From IMG/VR virus record IMGVR_UViG_3300011113_000640, positions 62,001 to 126,000 of that record: a stretch of DNA of 64,000 nucleotides; one strand, written 5' to 3'. Shown piece after piece: positions 25,515-30,420 of this stretch. Below the pieces are notes generated by a model. The model was not told the DNA's origin, searched no databases, and saw nothing but the letters and a program-made list of their open reading frames with translations. Every line of letters starts with the position of its first letter. Within the stretch, counting starts at the first letter, position 1. The translations under genes were made by a program, and so were the position numbers.

Positions 25515-26306
25515 ATGTCAGTGAGCTTTGATTTAATTTCAGATTTGCATGTAGAGACTTGGGACCAATTTGATTGGAGTGATCAGGCCACTTCGCCCTA
25601 TTGCATAGTGGCAGGAGATGTGGCACGCAACCGAGAAAGATTATTACAATCACTTGAGAATCTTGGCCGCTGTTATCCTGGTGGAGTTTTTTATGTAGAT
25701 GGCAATGAGGAACACAAAGATTACATAGACGATCTAGTGGCCAGTTACCGAGATCTTGCCAAGGATATTTCGACCATAAAAAATGTAGTTTACATGCAAG
25801 ACAATGTTGTCATCATCAATGGTGTTGCTCTGTTAGGAACCAATGCCTGGTGGACCTATGACTTTGATCCGGACATTGACGTTGAATCCAGCATACAAGC
25901 CATACAAGATCATTTTGGCATTTCAAATTCAGCAGCCACCAATATTGTAGGAGTGGCCTACAATGATGCCAATTACATGATCAACAGTGTGCGCAAATTA
26001 CAAACTCACAAAGAAGTGGCTACCATAGTTATTGTCAGTCATACTGTGCCAGCACCTTGGATTGTGTCACATGATCCTGATCTAGTAGGAACCTGGAGAT
26101 ACAACGGCATGGGCAACAGTGTTATCACTAGAGCCATCGACGAGGATACCGAAAACAAAATCCATACCTGGTGTTTTGGTCATTATCATAGACCTGTTGA
26201 CCAGAATTTTGGCGGTATCAGATACGTGAGCAATCCACGGGGTCGCGGCGGCACACCATGGAGCCAACCTGTGTATTATCCCAAAAGAATTGTTGTGGAC
26301 TTCTAA
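25515..26306 (+). CDS. Calcineurin-like metallophosphoesterase
   Basis: SDLH, AGD, GNEE (canonically GNH), SHT, FGHYH, SNPRG. Confidence 0.85.
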   Translation: MSVSFDLISDLHVETWDQFDWSDQATSPYCIVAGDVARNRERLLQSLENLGRCYPGGVFYVDGNEEHKDYIDDLVASYRDLAKDISTIKNVVYMQDNVVIINGVALLGTNAWWTYDFDPDIDVESSIQAIQDHFGISNSAATNIVGVAYNDANYMINSVRKLQTHKEVATIVIVSHTVPAPWIVSHDPDLVGTWRYNGMGNSVITRAIDEDTENKIHTWCFGHYHRPVDQNFGGIRYVSNPRGRGGTPWSQPVYYPKRIVVDF

Positions 26307-26611
26307 GCTGTCTCGGGTTCGAGCTTGATCTGCAAGGGATAATTGTTGTTGCGTGCCTGCACCGTGACTTCGATGCCTTTTTGTTCGGCGATTTCATAAG
26401 GCAATACAGCTACCACAGCACTGCCTGCTTCGTGTATGTCGTGAGTGATTTGCACAGCAGTTTGTTCGTTGTAGTTGAAAGATTCTATCAAGGTCTCAAT
26501 CACAAACTCCATGGGTGTGGCATTGTCATTGAGATAGATAATTTTGAACATGGGTGGTTCAGCTAGTCCCAAGTTTGTTTTGGTTTTTGTGATTGAATCA
26601 GCTTGTGACAT
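26303..26611 (-). CDS. clpS: ATP-dependent Clp protease adaptor ClpS
   Basis: PPMFKIIYLNDNATPMEFV...IHEAG...EIAEQK...YPL. Confidence 0.9.
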   Translation of the reverse strand: MSQADSITKTKTNLGLAEPPMFKIIYLNDNATPMEFVIETLIESFNYNEQTAVQITHDIHEAGSAVVAVLPYEIAEQKGIEVTVQARNNNYPLQIKLEPETA

Positions 26612-26670
26612 TGCGTTTCCTTGTTGGTAGTAGGGAGCGACATGCCCCCTACTGTATTTACTACATTATA

Positions 26671-27111
26671 CTATTTTGCGTAGGTGATCGCAATGGTCTT
26701 TGGCTTCATGGCCTCGGGCACACGACGCTCCAAACGCACTGTAAGAATACCATCCTTGCTTTCGGCCGTGACTACTTCCACATAGTCGGCCATGGTAAAG
26801 GTACGGATGAACTTGCGGGCACTGATGCCTTGATGCAAGTATTCGGTGCCAACCAACATGGCTTCGGGTTGTTTTTCACCTGTGATGATCAATTCTCCAT
26901 CCTTGACGTGAACGTCAATCTCACCTTGTGCAAAGCCTGCTACTGCGACCTGGATTTCAAAGGTCTCATCGCCGGTTTTCAAGATGTTGTAGGGTGGATA
27001 GTTGGTGTTGCTGGCATGATCCATTTGATCCATGATACGACCAAACAAACGATCTACACCAATGCTGTTACGATAAAATGGACTGAGGTCCAGAGCTGTG
27101 ATTTTTGTCAT
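26671..27111 (-). CDS. Small heat-shock protein (Hsp20/IbpA-like)
   Basis: IGVDRLF, YPPYNI, AVAGF, YLHQGISARKF, DGILTV, PEAMKPKTI. Confidence 0.95.
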   Translation of the reverse strand: MTKITALDLSPFYRNSIGVDRLFGRIMDQMDHASNTNYPPYNILKTGDETFEIQVAVAGFAQGEIDVHVKDGELIITGEKQPEAMLVGTEYLHQGISARKFIRTFTMADYVEVVTAESKDGILTVRLERRVPEAMKPKTIAITYAK

Positions 27112-27173
27112 GTTTTTCTCCTTTAGTTAAGCAAGTATGACTTTAATGTAGACCCGACCATCGGCATCTACAT
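27107..27173 (-). promoter_or_regulatory. ROSE-like RNA thermometer in the Hsp20 5' UTR
   Basis: 5' hairpin ATGTAGA..CCGA/TCGG..TCTACAT, then GUCAU-A-CUUGCUU pairing with the AAGGAG SD and AUGAC. Confidence 0.65.
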
Positions 27174-27191
27174 AATATATTTATAACACAT

Positions 27192-27416
27192 TTACCACCG
27201 TCTGTCAATAAGTCGATATTCGAATTTGCTGTTCCAGGTCGTGGCAAACACAGTATAGAAACGGTCTTGATCAAAGGCCAATCTATGTGTATATTTTATT
27301 GTTTTTTGTGTGTAAGGAATGTTGTAGCGAGTTGCCCAATCAACTATATCAAGACGAACAAGATTTAAAACAAACCCGTAACTTTCGTCCTGAGGCAATG
27401 CAAATTCTACAAACAC
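27192..27416 (-). CDS. Hypothetical protein
   Basis: Probable GTG start just after rpsU; the longer ORF in the track overlaps rpsU. Confidence 0.5.
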   Translation of the reverse strand: MFVEFALPQDESYGFVLNLVRLDIVDWATRYNIPYTQKTIKYTHRLAFDQDRFYTVFATTWNSKFEYRLIDRRW

Positions 27417-27417
27417 A

Positions 27418-27639
27418 TCAATAGAGTTTTTTTGGTAGTTGTTGATCACGCAGTTTTTTGCGCCAGCGTGCAGCGGCACCACCTTTTTTGCGTTTTCTTT
27501 TGGTAGTGGGTTTTTCGTAGGTTTCGCGACCTCGCAGTTCCTCCAAGAGGCCTTGTTCTTGGATCTTTTTCTTGAACTTGCGCAGAGCACGTTCCACATT
27601 GCCGTCTCGGACGACCACGCTTCTGCGATACTCTTTCAC
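27418..27639 (-). CDS. rpsU: Ribosomal protein bS21
   Basis: [12 protein letters not shown]...[15 protein letters not shown]...AARWRKK. Confidence 0.9.
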
Positions 27640-28835
27640 GAATTTTCCTGTAACAGTGTCATGGGTGTATTTACCTGGGTTTTATTGATTGTGACCTGTA
27701 ATATATTTTGTCGACGGTACCGGGGCAGATCAAACATGTGCGGCAATAACACCCGCTCCAGTTCGCTGTGTAATCCGCGGGCACCTGTGCCGGTTCTCAG
27801 TGTGCGTTCCACTATGAGATCCAGGCTTTCGGGATCAAATTGTAGATTTACCTGATCTTGATCAAACAACCATTGGTATTGACCCACAAAATTGTTTTTG
27901 ATTTCTGTCAACACACTGATCAATTGTGCCCGGGTCAGGGCATGTAGGTTTACATAGTTGCTGAATCTACCCACAAATTCGGGTATCATTCCATACCGCA
28001 CCAGGTCTTCTGGAGTAATGGGTTCTTGTCGGGTATCATCCGCCGATGAGATTTGTGCAGCAAATCCCATGGCTGTGCCTTGCACACGATTTTGTATGAT
28101 ACGGTCCATGCCCACAAACGCACCGCCGGCTATAAACAATATATTTGAAGTGTCAATCTCTACAGTTTCTGTAGTGTTGCTTTTTCTTGTTCCTTGCACA
28201 GGCACCTTGCATCGAGTGCCTTCGACCAATTTCAGCAAGGCCTGTTGCACACCTTCGCCGCTGACATCTCGACTGACCGTTGCACTTTCGCTTTTACGAG
28301 CTATCTTGTCAATTTCGTCCAGGAACACTATGCCGCGCTGACAGCGTTCTACATCGCCATCGGTGGCCATGTATAATCTTGTGATCATGCTTTCTACGTC
28401 ATCGCCTACATAGCCTGCTTCGGTCAAACAGGTGGCATCGGCTATGACAAACGGCACATCAAGATATTCGGCTACGGTGCGGGCCATCAAGGTTTTGCCT
28501 GTGCCAGTAGGACCGATCATGAGTATGTTGGCCTTGGCTATGCGTCGGTCGGCCTGACCGATACGTTTGTAATGATTGGCTATGGCTACGCTGAGCACAA
28601 TCTTGGCTGAATCCTGCCCTACCACGTGCTGATCAAGGTAATCTCTTATGTCTTTGGGATCAGGAACTGAAACTGTGGCGGGCTTTTTTTCTGGTGTGGC
28701 CTTGGTATCTTTGAGAAGCCCGCCACACAGATCCACACACTCGTTGCAGATGGCTACCTTGTGACTGACTATGAGTTTGCCCACACGATCTTTGTGTTTG
28801 TCACAGAAACTGCAATGTTCTATGGCCGGGCTCAC
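27636..28835 (-). CDS. clpX: ATP-dependent Clp protease ATPase subunit ClpX
   Basis: CSFC/ICNEC Zn domain, [38 protein letters not shown] loop, TGARGL; start uncertain (28835 GTG or 28889). Confidence 0.95.
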
Positions 28836-28836
28836 G

Positions 28837-30420
28837 TCAGGCCTGTCCGGTAGATCGTAATCTTTGTTCAATGCTGTCACGTTCAGCATCGCTCAACAAC
28901 TCAGGATCATATTCACCTGTGCTGATTTTTTCTATGAGATGATCTATGTAGTCGTCATTGTAGGCATGGGTATCACTTTGAGACTTGTCTACTTCAATCC
29001 AGGTTTTGCCATTGAACTTGTATAGCACACTGGGCAGTTGATCCACACGCAAGAACATGTCACTCTTGTTGGGGTTTGGTGGAAACGCGGTACCAAACCC
29101 GCGGACTTCACCCATTAATCCTTCAGGACGGTTGTCAGCTTCTAGGCCCAGTTGATCTTGATAGGCAGGATGATTCCAAGGAAAGTCTTCTACCTGTCCT
29201 GTTTGATGCATGCGGCGCCAATGTTTGATTGTTTCTCTTGGGTTGGCTTCTTTCCATTTTCTAATGGCTTCTTTTTCTCGAGGATCAATGCTGTCATCTA
29301 TGTCATCATCTGTTTTAATTTCATCAACAACTGTGTCTACCGGCTGGTTTAATGGAGCATGATCAGCTTCAGGATCTCGGTTAACGATTTTTTTGGCACG
29401 TGTCCACATGCTGTCTAGGCCAGCCAACACTGTCTGTTTAACAGTCTTTGCGGATTTAGCCGGGTCTTGTTCATCGGGCACATCAATTTCCGGGCCGGTC
29501 TGCGTCCATTCGTCTGTGCCCGAACGTATACCTTCAAACTCTCGAGGGAATGGCCATGGCACAGGTTTTTCCTTTTGTTGTTGATCCCAAAATCTGGCAC
29601 GCTCACGAGCTCGATCAAACCAAGATTGGACTTCTGGATCCTTATCGTTGACTTGCGTTTGATTTTCGCGCTCCCATTCAAAGGTCTTGGTGGCGGCCAA
29701 CAACAGGGTCAGGGCCAAGGGATCAAACACTATGACTATGAGTATGATTACCCAACGCACGGCCTTTTCTAACAGATTGGCATCGGGATTGTCACCATAT
29801 ATGAGTGCGGCAATGTATTTGATAGGACCTACTTCGGCTTCAATCTGCCGAGCTTGGCTGGCTATGGGTGCTCGTTGTTCTTGTAGTTTGGTAATCTCGC
29901 TCTGTGCCCGAGAAATGTCGTTCTGTAGATTGCCACGTTCACGGGCCTGACTACGGCGCAGGTTGGCAGCTTTGTCTGCCCCTTGCTCGCTAATGCTACG
30001 ACTCATGGTCTGATCCACGGCTTCATCCATTTGGCGCAGGGCCTTTCTGGCTGCTTCTATGTTGTCACGCTGTGTCCGGATCTTGTCATCGTAGATCTGC
30101 ACCTGGGCCTGTATGTCGCCCGACGGTACAGCCTGATCCAGGTGTGCCTTGGAAAGGAAGCCAAACACGCCCATGCTGGTCAAGACCATGAGTATGGCCA
30201 CAGCGGCACTGAGATATATCTTGTACTGCATTTCTGCACGGTGCCAATACTTGTGCAACCAGAGAGTTGATACCACCTTGCCTACTTCAAGACTGCTACC
30301 AAGAATAACAATGGGCCAGAAGGCCGCGGCAAATATGGCTGTGAGACCAAGTATGCTGTAATAGGCTGCACTCACTGATATGATCAGTGCAGTTGCGAGA
30401 GTTAGTATGCCAAACCACAT
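28837..30420 (-). CDS. Membrane protein with coiled-coil and acidic C-terminal region
   Basis: Three N-terminal TM segments, heptad region, EVGPIKYIA...VFDPLA TM. Confidence 0.7.
   Translation of the reverse strand: MWFGILTLATALIISVSAAYYSILGLTAIFAAAFWPIVILGSSLEVGKVVSTLWLHKYWHRAEMQYKIYLSAAVAILMVLTSMGVFGFLSKAHLDQAVPSGDIQAQVQIYDDKIRTQRDNIEAARKALRQMDEAVDQTMSRSISEQGADKAANLRRSQARERGNLQNDISRAQSEITKLQEQRAPIASQARQIEAEVGPIKYIAALIYGDNPDANLLEKAVRWVIILIVIVFDPLALTLLLAATKTFEWERENQTQVNDKDPEVQSWFDRARERARFWDQQQKEKPVPWPFPREFEGIRSGTDEWTQTGPEIDVPDEQDPAKSAKTVKQTVLAGLDSMWTRAKKIVNRDPEADHAPLNQPVDTVVDEIKTDDDIDDSIDPREKEAIRKWKEANPRETIKHWRRMHQTGQVEDFPWNHPAYQDQLGLEADNRPEGLMGEVRGFGTAFPPNPNKSDMFLRVDQLPSVLYKFNGKTWIEVDKSQSDTHAYNDDYIDHLIEKISTGEYDPELLSDAERDSIEQRLRSTGQA

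What the first reader, a model, noticed from the sequence alone, without database searches (positions are those of the whole stretch)
27107..27183. ROSE-like RNA thermometer controlling a phage small heat-shock gene
Seen (- strand): TAAATA, then hairpin AUGUAGA-UG-CCGA-UGG-UCGG-G-UCUACAU, then GUCAU-A-CUUGCUU-AACUA-AAGGAG-AAAAAC-AUGAC. The UUGCU opposes the SD with a bulged G, and GUCAU pairs with the start codon. Known: this is the hallmark of ROSE thermometers upstream of proteobacterial sHsp genes. Inference: a phage late promoter joined to a temperature-gated translation switch.
Basis: partly seen in the sequence, partly recalled or inferred. Interest (0 to 1): 0.62.

Follow-up and report, generated by a model that had tools for sequence, protein, structure and literature searches.

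The report
ROSE-like RNA thermometer before phage hsp20
The leader of a small heat-shock gene in a 320-kb freshwater T4-like phage has the two-hairpin 'ROSE-like' RNA fold that bacteria use to turn such genes on with heat, and a related leader sits before hsp20 genes of many aquatic phages, cultured cyanophages and pelagiphages included.

Summary
On the minus strand, 27208-27107 reads:
- promoter: TTGACA, 17 nt, TGn, TATAAATA
- hairpin I: 27173-27146, stable
- GUCAU, then CUU-G-CUU opposite the SD AAGGAG
- AUGAC, the start of a 146-aa Hsp20 gene

**Support**
- Rfam ROSE_3 aligns full length with the AUG in register. The score is 31.1 bits, below the 43-bit cut-off.
- The leader is conserved before sHsp genes at nearly all of 41 viral loci (93-45% protein identity).
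- A model built from it also matches the hsp20 leaders of phages Melnitz, Mosig, S-PM2 and S-SM2. HTVC008M scores weakly (12 bits).
- Hairpin I covaries strongly: 11 of 12 pairs change on both sides in an independent set of 60 sequences.
- A coding-blind search for the anti-SD/SD motif in viral contigs landed before sHsp genes in 67 of 81 matches.
- The phage is T4-like (Gp23, gp55 homologue). NATAAATA marks its late promoters, so the "late promoter" reading stands, but a perfect sigma-70 -35 box and TGn are superimposed.

**Caveats**
- Energy models alone do not single this leader out.
- No RNA or temperature data exist.

**Verdict:** a new, virus-borne member of a known kind.

The parts
27203..27208 (-). 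-35 box TTGACA. It lies inside the 3' end of the upstream ORF, 17 nt before the -10 box.
   Evidence: A -35 box with at most 1 mismatch is present in 24 of 46 distinct related upstream regions.
27178..27188 (-). TGn (27188-27186) followed by TATAAATA (27185-27178). This reads both as a T4-type late promoter box and as a sigma-70 extended -10 box.
   Evidence: ATAAATA is present in 40 of 46 related upstream regions. A gp55 homologue is encoded in the genome.
27146..27173 (-). Hairpin I at the predicted 5' end of the mRNA: 8-bp outer stem, bulged G, 4-bp inner stem, loop UGG. Predicted energy is -12.0 kcal/mol at 37 C. The transcription start is inferred at about 27173.
   Evidence: Covariation: 9 of 12 pairs and 11 of 12 pairs change on both sides.
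27137..27141 (-). GUCAU, complementary to AUGAC at the start codon; forms the outer helix of hairpin II.
   Evidence: MFE structure. GUCA, GUUA or AGUC recurs in most relatives whose gene starts AUGAC. Relatives without it have a longer SD helix instead.
27129..27135 (-). Anti-SD CUUGCUU, which contains the ROSE motif UUGCU. G27132 is the candidate bulge.
   Evidence: The six paired positions are nearly invariant in 41 distinct leaders (38-40 of 41 hold the commonest pair). Variants seen by eye keep complementarity (CUUCGUUU, UUUUCGCUU, CUGCCU, CUCGCUU).
27118..27123 (-). Shine-Dalgarno AAGGAG, 6 nt before the AUG.
27107..27111 (-). AUGAC: the start codon (27111-27109) plus 2 nt, paired with GUCAU in the predicted structure.
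   Evidence: AUG unpaired probability is at most 0.08 up to 42 C in the model.
26671..27111 (-). Small heat-shock protein gene, 146 aa, IbpA-type N-terminus.
   Evidence: Pfam HSP20 E 2.6e-17. PHROG 432 E 2.6e-38. 41 viral and 192 bacterial relatives, of which 80 were kept.

Best explanation
This is a ROSE-like RNA thermometer in the predicted 62-nt leader of a phage-encoded small heat-shock gene.

Transcription (inferred from sequence). One promoter reads both as a T4-type late promoter (TATAAATA, used by the phage's gp55-like sigma) and as a near-consensus sigma-70 extended -10 promoter (TTGACA, 17 nt, TGn-TATAAA). The mRNA is therefore probably made both early and late, without the sigma-32 control that bacterial ibpA genes have. 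The transcript should start at the foot of hairpin I.

Hairpin I (structure shown by covariation; role inferred). It is stable and not heat-sensitive. It probably serves as a folding scaffold and protects the 5' end.

Hairpin II (predicted). It is weak. CUU-G-CUU pairs imperfectly with the SD AAGGAG, and GUCAU pairs with AUGAC, so ribosome entry is hindered in the cold.

Switch (inferred by analogy with validated ROSE-like elements). Warming melts hairpin II, and the holdase chaperone is translated only when the infected cell is heat-stressed.
For: - Rfam ROSE_3 is the only Rfam family that matches with any support. It aligns full length (1-69 of 69) with the AUG in register, E 5.7e-4 over 2 kb.
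- Thirteen related phage leaders give the same sub-threshold match, 25-38 bits.
- The motifs, two-hairpin layout and leader length match the experimentally validated Pseudomonas ibpA thermometers (PMC3669281).
- The leader is conserved before sHsp genes at nearly all of 41 viral loci, down to 45% protein identity.
- My model also matches the hsp20 leaders of cultured phages Melnitz, Mosig, S-PM2 and S-SM2. HTVC008M scores only 12 bits (E 0.25), but the two hairpins are visible by eye.
- Covariation: 95% of cells are paired against 37-57% in slid controls, and 0 of 500 shuffles reach the observed values.
- In an independent set of 60 sequences picked only by hairpin-II letters, 11 of 12 hairpin-I pairs show changes on both sides.
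- A coding-blind pattern (CTTGCTT, 3-8 nt, AAGGAG, 5-8 nt, ATG) in viral contigs precedes an sHsp gene in 67 of 81 matches and DnaK in 3.
- Energies fit the stable-plus-labile design. Hairpin I is -12.0 kcal/mol at 37 C. Hairpin II is -3.2 at 37 C and -6.9 at 20 C. The SD core alone is 0.0 at 37 C and -2.2 at 20 C.
- Promoter: gp55 homologue, intergenic enrichment of (N)ATAAATA, and a perfect -35 box with TGn.
- The leader is among the longest after such a promoter box: 66 nt, against mostly 4-30 nt for other genes.
Against: - There are no temperature, structure-probing or expression data. No RNA run holds the sequence.
- The Rfam score is below the curated cut-off (31.1 against 43). However, 0 of 20 bacterial IbpA-type leaders reached any ROSE cut-off either.
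- The energy model does not single this start site out. The cost of opening it, 5.7 kcal/mol at 25 C, ranks 88th of 139 in a crude gene set from the same genome.
- 24% of shuffled leaders pair the SD as well as the real one.
- For the window's own sequence, the model prefers a register with only 3 SD pairs. That register is 2.3 kcal/mol better than the bulged-G register.
- Hairpin II shows almost no covariation, because the SD side cannot vary.
Confidence: 0.7

Rival explanations
1. The leader is structural but not a thermometer. Hairpin I stabilises the mRNA 5' end, and the weak SD hairpin merely sets a constant, moderate translation rate.
For: - The start-site opening energy is unexceptional.
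- Shuffles often pair the SD as well.
- The neighbouring clpS gene also has a promoter-proximal hairpin without any anti-SD, so 5' hairpins may be a general habit of this phage.
Against: - The anti-SD heptamer is nearly invariant while the linker and loop drift.
- The motif is tied to heat-shock genes (sHsp, DnaK) in a coding-blind search.
- It is the same design as validated thermometers (PMC3669281).
Confidence: 0.17
2. The conserved leader is an operator for a trans-acting factor, such as a RegA-like translational repressor or a small RNA, rather than a direct temperature sensor.
For: - T4-like relatives encode RegA. It lies next to hsp20 in S-PM2 and S-SM2 and is present in HTVC008M.
- The A-rich SD-AUG spacer is conserved.
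Against: - Nothing here points to a binding partner.
- The conserved letters are exactly those of the ROSE motif and its SD partner.
- Hairpin I varies in sequence and keeps only its shape.
- I did not test whether this genome has regA.
Confidence: 0.08
3. Hairpin I is the transcription terminator of the upstream S21/ORF operon, and its resemblance to ROSE is chance.
For: It follows the upstream stop codon (27194-27192) by about 20 nt.
Against: - No U-tract follows it, and the terminator scan does not flag it.
- The conserved promoter lies between the stop codon and the hairpin.
- The hairpin travels with the sHsp gene in loci that have different upstream genes: groEL, dnaK or a true terminator.
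Confidence: 0.02

Closest known systems
Short ROSE-like thermometers of Pseudomonas ibpA (Krajewski et al. 2013, PMC3669281)
   Same: - Two hairpins in a 61-62-nt leader of an IbpA-type sHsp gene.
- A stable hairpin I at the 5' end.
- A short, labile hairpin II in which U(U/C)GCU pairs imperfectly with the SD.
   Different: - The Pseudomonas genes use a sigma-32 promoter, and their AUG is unpaired.
- Here the promoter is a phage late / sigma-70 hybrid, and the AUG is predicted to pair with GUCAU.
- The carrier is a virus.
- My phage model finds nothing significant in 80 bacterial sHsp loci.
Rfam ROSE_3 (RF02523)
   Same: - Full-length alignment.
- The same hairpin-I core (GAUGCCGA...UCGGGUC with a bulged G).
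- The same ACU-GCU anti-SD, and the AUG in register.
   Different: - The score is 31.1 bits against a cut-off of 43; phage relatives score 25-38.
- The hairpin-II loop and lower stem differ.
- No genome I sampled reached the cut-off, so I could not identify the family's home taxa.
Classical ROSE elements (RF00435; Bradyrhizobium, other Alphaproteobacteria, E. coli ibpA)
   Same: - SD masking by UUGCU or UCGCU with a bulged G.
- Location before sHsp genes.
- Sphingomonad leaders fetched here have a first hairpin with the same Y-G pair, bulged G and CC/GG core.
   Different: - Those elements have three or four hairpins and leaders of about 100 nt.
- RF00435 gives no match here at E up to 10.
Known phage RNA thermometers: lambda cIII, SPbeta blyA (fourU), a gut-phage sigma-70 gene (fourU), as listed in PMC11182007
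   Same: A cis-acting leader structure in a phage mRNA, proposed to gate translation by temperature.
   Different: - They belong to different structural classes and sit before different genes.
- None is ROSE-like and none precedes a chaperone gene.
- I found no paper that reports a ROSE-like element in a phage. That library lacks most subscription journals.

Membership tests
ROSE-like RNA thermometers (literature definition) | Lies in the 5' leader of a small heat-shock (Hsp20/IbpA) gene | tested here: met
   Pfam HSP20 E 2.6e-17. PHROG 432. The element ends at the ATG.
ROSE-like RNA thermometers (literature definition) | [quoted passage not shown] | tested here: met
   Two hairpins are predicted. 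Hairpin I is supported by covariation. Hairpin II is predicted in all 35 phage leaders folded.
ROSE-like RNA thermometers (literature definition) | U(U/C)GCU anti-SD motif paired imperfectly with the SD | tested here: met
   UUGCU lies within CUUGCUU (27135-27129), opposite AAGGAG. Cyanophage relatives carry the UCGCU variant.
ROSE-like RNA thermometers (literature definition) | Bulged G opposite the SD | tested here: inconclusive
   G27132 occupies the bulge column in the ROSE_3 alignment, and many relatives fold that way. For the window's own sequence, the energy model prefers another register by 2.3 kcal/mol.
ROSE-like RNA thermometers (literature definition) | Heat-induced melting of the SD hairpin and temperature-dependent translation | not testable with these tools
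   Only model energies are available. No RNA runs hold the sequence.
Rfam ROSE_3 (RF02523) | Score at or above the curated gathering cut-off (43 bits) | tested here: not met
   31.1 bits. For calibration, 0 of 20 bacterial IbpA-type leaders reached any ROSE cut-off.
Rfam ROSE (RF00435) | Any match to the model | tested here: not met
   No match at E up to 10 in 26000-28000.
T4-type late promoter | TATAAATA box about 6 nt before the start, in a phage that encodes a gp55-type sigma | tested here: met
   Box at 27185-27178. gp55 homologue: E 6.5e-7 against T4 gp55, and PHROG 12791 at 3.1e-73. 10 of 16 TATAAATA sites and 28 of 46 ATAAATA sites lie in the 6% of the genome that is intergenic.
T4-type late promoter | No -35 element | tested here: not met
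   A perfect TTGACA at 17 nt plus TGn. Other TATAAATA sites in the genome have 1-5 mismatches in the -35 hexamer, nearly all 2-5.
Sigma-70 extended -10 promoter | TTGACA, 16-18 nt, TGnTATAAT | tested here: met
   11 of 12 hexamer positions plus TG. Many similar promoters occur on the same strand of the genome. Activity was not tested.
Intrinsic terminator | GC-rich hairpin followed by a U-tract | tested here: not met
   UAAAGUCAU follows the stem. The terminator scan does not flag it.

The most novel reading that the evidence does not exclude
The ROSE-like leader is an old, clade-wide attribute of the hsp20 core gene of T4-like aquatic phages: cyanophages, pelagiphages, Methylophilales phages and their freshwater jumbo relatives. 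It has been re-used in front of phage dnaK and of an 8-codon mini-ORF upstream of phage groES-groEL. Together these would form a virus-encoded, RNA-gated heat-shock regulon that bypasses host sigma-32, and the first ROSE-type thermometers known in viruses.
Probability: 0.45. Interest if true: 0.75.

Novelty: new member of a known kind. Interest (0 to 1): 0.6.

Why it matters
- hsp20 is a core gene of T4-like cyanophages and pelagiphages, and its role in infection is still unclear. A temperature-gated leader would say when the protein is wanted: in heat-stressed infected cells. Cultured systems exist for a direct test (S-PM2, S-SM2, HTVC008M, Mosig, Melnitz).
- By the count in PMC11182007, only three RNA thermometers are known in phages, and none of them is ROSE-like.
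- The element would show a phage taking over a bacterial post-transcriptional heat sensor while replacing the sigma-32 promoter with its own.
- Temperature effects on phage-host dynamics in lakes and oceans are ecologically relevant.
- The short, modular leader could also serve as a low-temperature-range switch for synthetic biology.

Tried and rejected
- **Late promoter.** I first took TATAAATA for a plain sigma-70 -10 box, because its total count (16) is about what chance gives. I reversed this after finding Gp23, a gp55 homologue and strong intergenic enrichment.
- **Rfam at gathering thresholds** over the whole window: nothing.
- **MAFFT plus RNAalifold** on raw leaders recovered only 3 pairs, because stems of different length were misaligned. 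I replaced this with a covariance-model alignment, which leans towards the model. The second set was chosen without reference to hairpin I.
- **Phage model R1 against 80 bacterial sHsp loci:** no significant match.
- **Home taxa of ROSE_3:** sub-threshold matches in 3 of 151 genomes sampled from the class of a Novosphingobium genome, and in 0 of 151 from the class of a gammaproteobacterial MAG. None was over the cut-off. Unresolved.
- **Energy-based exceptionality** of the start site: not found.
- **Second copy in the own genome:** the weak hit at G000:301784-301836 has no hairpins. The genome has no GroEL.
- **Expression:** 20 DNA runs from 11 studies hold the stretch, mostly freshwater, lake or river. 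None is RNA. Read laying was not used, because contigs cannot show a transcript start.
- **Close cultured relative by DNA:** none found.
- **gp55 in HTVC008M:** not labelled in the two stretches of the annotation I read. I used T4 gp55 instead.
- **Upstream ORF against the HTVC008M hypothetical gene** in the same position: no similarity.
- **The two unnamed small proteins** behind the same leader (L147, L203): no family.

Full report
**1. What is in the sequence**

Read on the minus strand, the stretch holds these parts in order:
- the last codons and TAA stop (27194-27192) of an upstream ORF
- TTGACA (27208-27203), a 17-nt spacer, TGT (27188-27186) and TATAAATA (27185-27178)
- four bases
- a 28-nt hairpin (27173-27146): 8-bp outer stem, bulged G, 4-bp inner stem, loop UGG
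- UAAA
- GUCAU (27141-27137), then A
- CUUGCUU (27135-27129), loop AACUA, AAGGAG (27123-27118), AAAAAC
- AUGAC (27111-27107)

The ATG opens a 146-aa ORF. It is an Hsp20/alpha-crystallin protein (Pfam E 2.6e-17; PHROG 432 E 2.6e-38) with an IbpA-type N-terminus.

**2. Genomic setting**

The window is bases 62001-126000 of a 320,541-bp virus record, estimated 93% complete.
- The phage is T4-like. It has a Gp23 major capsid protein (E 4.6e-98).
- It has a homologue of the T4 late sigma gp55 (E 6.5e-7 against T4 gp55; PHROG 12791 'sigma factor for late transcription', E 3.1e-73).
- DNA near-identical to parts of this stretch occurs in runs from 11 studies, mostly labelled freshwater, lake or river. 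No run is on record as RNA.
- Around the sHsp gene lie clpX (27636-28889), ribosomal protein S21 (27418-27639), a small unknown ORF and clpS (26303-26611), all on the same strand.

**3. Match to known RNA families**

- In a permissive Rfam scan of 26000-28000, the only match with any support is the thermoregulator ROSE_3 (RF02523) at 27173-27106. It covers all 69 model positions and has the model's AUG on the gene's AUG. The score is 31.1 bits against a cut-off of 43, E 5.7e-4.
- The alignment shows the same hairpin-I core as the consensus, different but complementary outer-stem letters, and CUU-G-CUU / AAGGAG with the G in the bulge column.
- Nothing in the window reaches a gathering score.
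- The failure to reach the cut-off is weak evidence. Of 20 bacterial IbpA-type sHsp loci I fetched, none reached the cut-off of any ROSE family, although their leaders visibly carry UUGCU or UCGCU opposite the SD.

**4. Comparative evidence**

*Viral loci found by protein.*
- The sHsp protein found 41 viral loci at 93-45% identity, several on contigs of 317-344 kb.
- Nearly all carry the same leader plan: a promoter box, hairpin I with varying stem letters, a variable linker, CUUGCUU or a complementary variant, AAGGAG, 5-8 nt and ATG.
- A covariance model built from 12 of them (R1) matched 38 of the 41 loci before the sHsp gene. The other three hold too little upstream DNA to judge.

*Covariation in that alignment.*
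- 95.2% of cells pair, against 37-57% when partners are slid by 1-3 columns.
- 13 of 18 pairs show changes on both sides, 9 of 12 in hairpin I.
- No shuffle of 500 reaches the observed values.

*An independent, coding-blind test.*
- I searched all viral contigs for the letters CTTGCTT, 3-8 nt, AAGGAG, 5-8 nt, ATG. These carry no coding information beyond the ATG.
- Of 81 matches in the 80 loci returned, 67 stand directly before an sHsp gene (23-62% identical to this one), 3 before DnaK, 10 before other ORFs and 1 before a tiny ORF.
- Sixty of them also match the full two-hairpin model.
- In that set, which was chosen without reference to hairpin I, 11 of 12 hairpin-I pairs change on both sides and 92% of cells pair.

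*What covariation does and does not show.*
- Hairpin I is a real, selected structure.
- Hairpin II cannot covary much, because one arm is the SD. Its variants still keep complementarity and move the bulged G: CUUCGUUU, UUUUCGCUU, CUGCCU, and CUCGCUU in cyanophages.
- Leaders fall into two designs. One has a short SD helix plus a remote helix against the start codon (GUCA:UGAC, as here). The other has an SD helix lengthened by one to three pairs.

**5. Cultured phages carry it too**

R1 matches the leaders of the annotated hsp20 genes of:

| Phage | R1 score (bits) |
|---|---|
| Methylophilales phage Melnitz | 46.7 |
| Synechococcus phage S-PM2 | 35.7 |
| Pelagibacter phage Mosig | 31.5 |
| Synechococcus phage S-SM2 | 25.3 |
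| Pelagibacter phage HTVC008M | 12 (E 0.25; clear by eye) |

HTVC008M also has the order S21, small ORF, hsp20, although the small ORFs are not alike. I found no paper that links phage hsp20 to a thermometer. A 2024 paper counts only lambda cIII, SPbeta blyA and one sigma-70 gene leader as phage thermometers, the latter two of the fourU type (PMC11182007). The library searched lacks most subscription journals, so this absence is provisional.

**6. The promoter**

I first doubted the 'late promoter' reading, then found it supported.

*Evidence for a T4-type late promoter.*
- Ten of 16 TATAAATA sites and 28 of 46 ATAAATA sites lie in the 6% of the genome that is intergenic.
- 42 of the 46 ATAAATA sites are followed within 90 nt by an ORF start, mostly 4-30 nt away.
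- With a gp55 homologue present, NATAAATA is this phage's late promoter.
- The sHsp gene has one of the longest leaders after such a box (66 nt), which is the room the thermometer needs.

*Evidence for a superimposed sigma-70 promoter.*
- This site alone among the 16 also has a perfect TTGACA at 17 nt together with TGn. That is the pattern of the many sigma-70-type promoters on this strand.
- Among 46 distinct related upstream regions, 40 have ATAAATA, 24 also have a -35 box with at most one mismatch, and 20 of those have TGn.
- The two cyanophages instead have TATAAT after a terminator.

I therefore read the window's promoter as a late / sigma-70 hybrid. This is an inference. Bacterial homologues carry sigma-32-like boxes instead (PMC3669281).

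**7. Energetics**

| Element | 20 C (kcal/mol) | 37 C (kcal/mol) |
|---|---|---|
| Hairpin I | -16.6 | -12.0 |
| Hairpin II, minimum-energy register | -6.9 | -3.2 |
| Hairpin II, bulged-G register | -4.8 | -0.9 |
| SD core alone | -2.2 | 0.0 |

This is the stable-plus-labile design shown by probing for Pseudomonas ibpA, where hairpin I stays closed and hairpin II melts.

Energy alone, however, does not mark this leader as special:
- Opening the SD-AUG region costs 5.7 kcal/mol at 25 C, which ranks 88th of 139 in a crude gene set from the genome.
- 24% of shuffled leaders pair the SD as well.

**8. Mechanism**

*Shown:*
- the sequence parts
- the conserved fold of hairpin I
- the tie between the anti-SD motif and heat-shock genes
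- the presence of late-transcription machinery

*Inferred:*
- a transcript start at about 27173
- transcription both early and late
- SD and AUG occlusion in the cold
- melting and translation on warming

**9. Rivals**

- A non-sensing structural leader (0.17).
- An operator for RegA or another factor (0.08).
- A terminator or chance (0.02). No U-tract follows the hairpin, and the promoter lies between the stop codon and the hairpin.

**10. Verdict**

This is a genuine, conserved ROSE-like element in a new carrier. By the literature definition it meets the location, architecture and motif criteria. The bulged G is inconclusive for this one sequence, the Rfam cut-off is not met, and the thermal response is untested. 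I file it as a new member of a known kind, with interest 0.6.

Noticed in passing
L009:984-1043; also L142, L157, L162: Related phages carry a second ROSE-like leader directly before a phage-encoded Hsp70/DnaK gene (Pfam HSP70 E 6e-255 for L009:1043-2935). ROSE-like control of dnaK is not something I know from bacteria.
   Followed up: partly
L016:797-880; likewise L005, L011, L014, L015, L019, L020, L022 about 2.1 kb upstream of their sHsp gene: A second copy of the promoter plus ROSE-like leader drives a conserved 8-codon mini-ORF (MSKH-T/I-Y-L/V-T, then a conserved CUGACCUAGCGUCA). A separate sigma-70-like promoter and phage groES-groEL follow (Pfam Cpn10 and Cpn60 confirmed). The purpose of the mini-ORF is unknown.
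   Followed up: partly
window 26303-28889 (-): A proteostasis and translation gene cluster: clpX, ribosomal protein S21, a small unknown ORF, hsp20 and clpS, all on one strand. The order S21, small ORF, hsp20 is shared with Pelagibacter phage HTVC008M.
   Followed up: partly
window 26628-26693 (-): clpS has its own sigma-70-like promoter (TTGCGA, 17 nt, TATAAT) and a promoter-proximal hairpin (AGUAGGG...CCCUACU), but no anti-SD. Hairpins at the 5' end may be common in this phage's mRNAs.
   Followed up: no
window 12367, 14678, 25140, 30434, 39499, 53649, 54851, 58018 (-); 12445, 14725 (+): (N)ATAAATA boxes a few to some tens of bases before ORF starts. They are likely T4-type late promoters, many with very short leaders.
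   Followed up: partly
window 6977, 8520, 16434, 36424, 38263, 38584, 39246 (-), and many more genome-wide: A family of near-consensus sigma-70 promoters: TTGAC(A/C), 17 nt, and mostly TG(C/T)TATAAT or a close variant. Several share spacer letters (for example AAAAATGCCCGAT), which suggests a repeated early-promoter cassette.
   Followed up: no
window 27192-27599 (-): The listed 135-aa ORF overlaps the S21 gene by 180 nt. A GTG at 27416, one base after the S21 stop codon, gives a more likely 74-aa product. It has no Pfam or PHROG match.
   Followed up: partly
L024:13-61 (-): A glutamine riboswitch (RF01739, 53 bits, cut-off 35) on a viral contig that also carries an sHsp gene with the leader.
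   Followed up: no
G000:C1:209124-209160 (-), outside the window: The gp55-like late sigma gene is itself preceded by TTGACA, 16 nt, TACAAT overlapping ATAAATA. This is another sigma-70 / late hybrid promoter.
   Followed up: no
L147:2531-2861 (-); L203:4153-4404 (+): Two small unknown proteins (90 and 65 aa) sit behind full two-hairpin ROSE-like leaders on viral contigs. Neither has a family match.
   Followed up: partly
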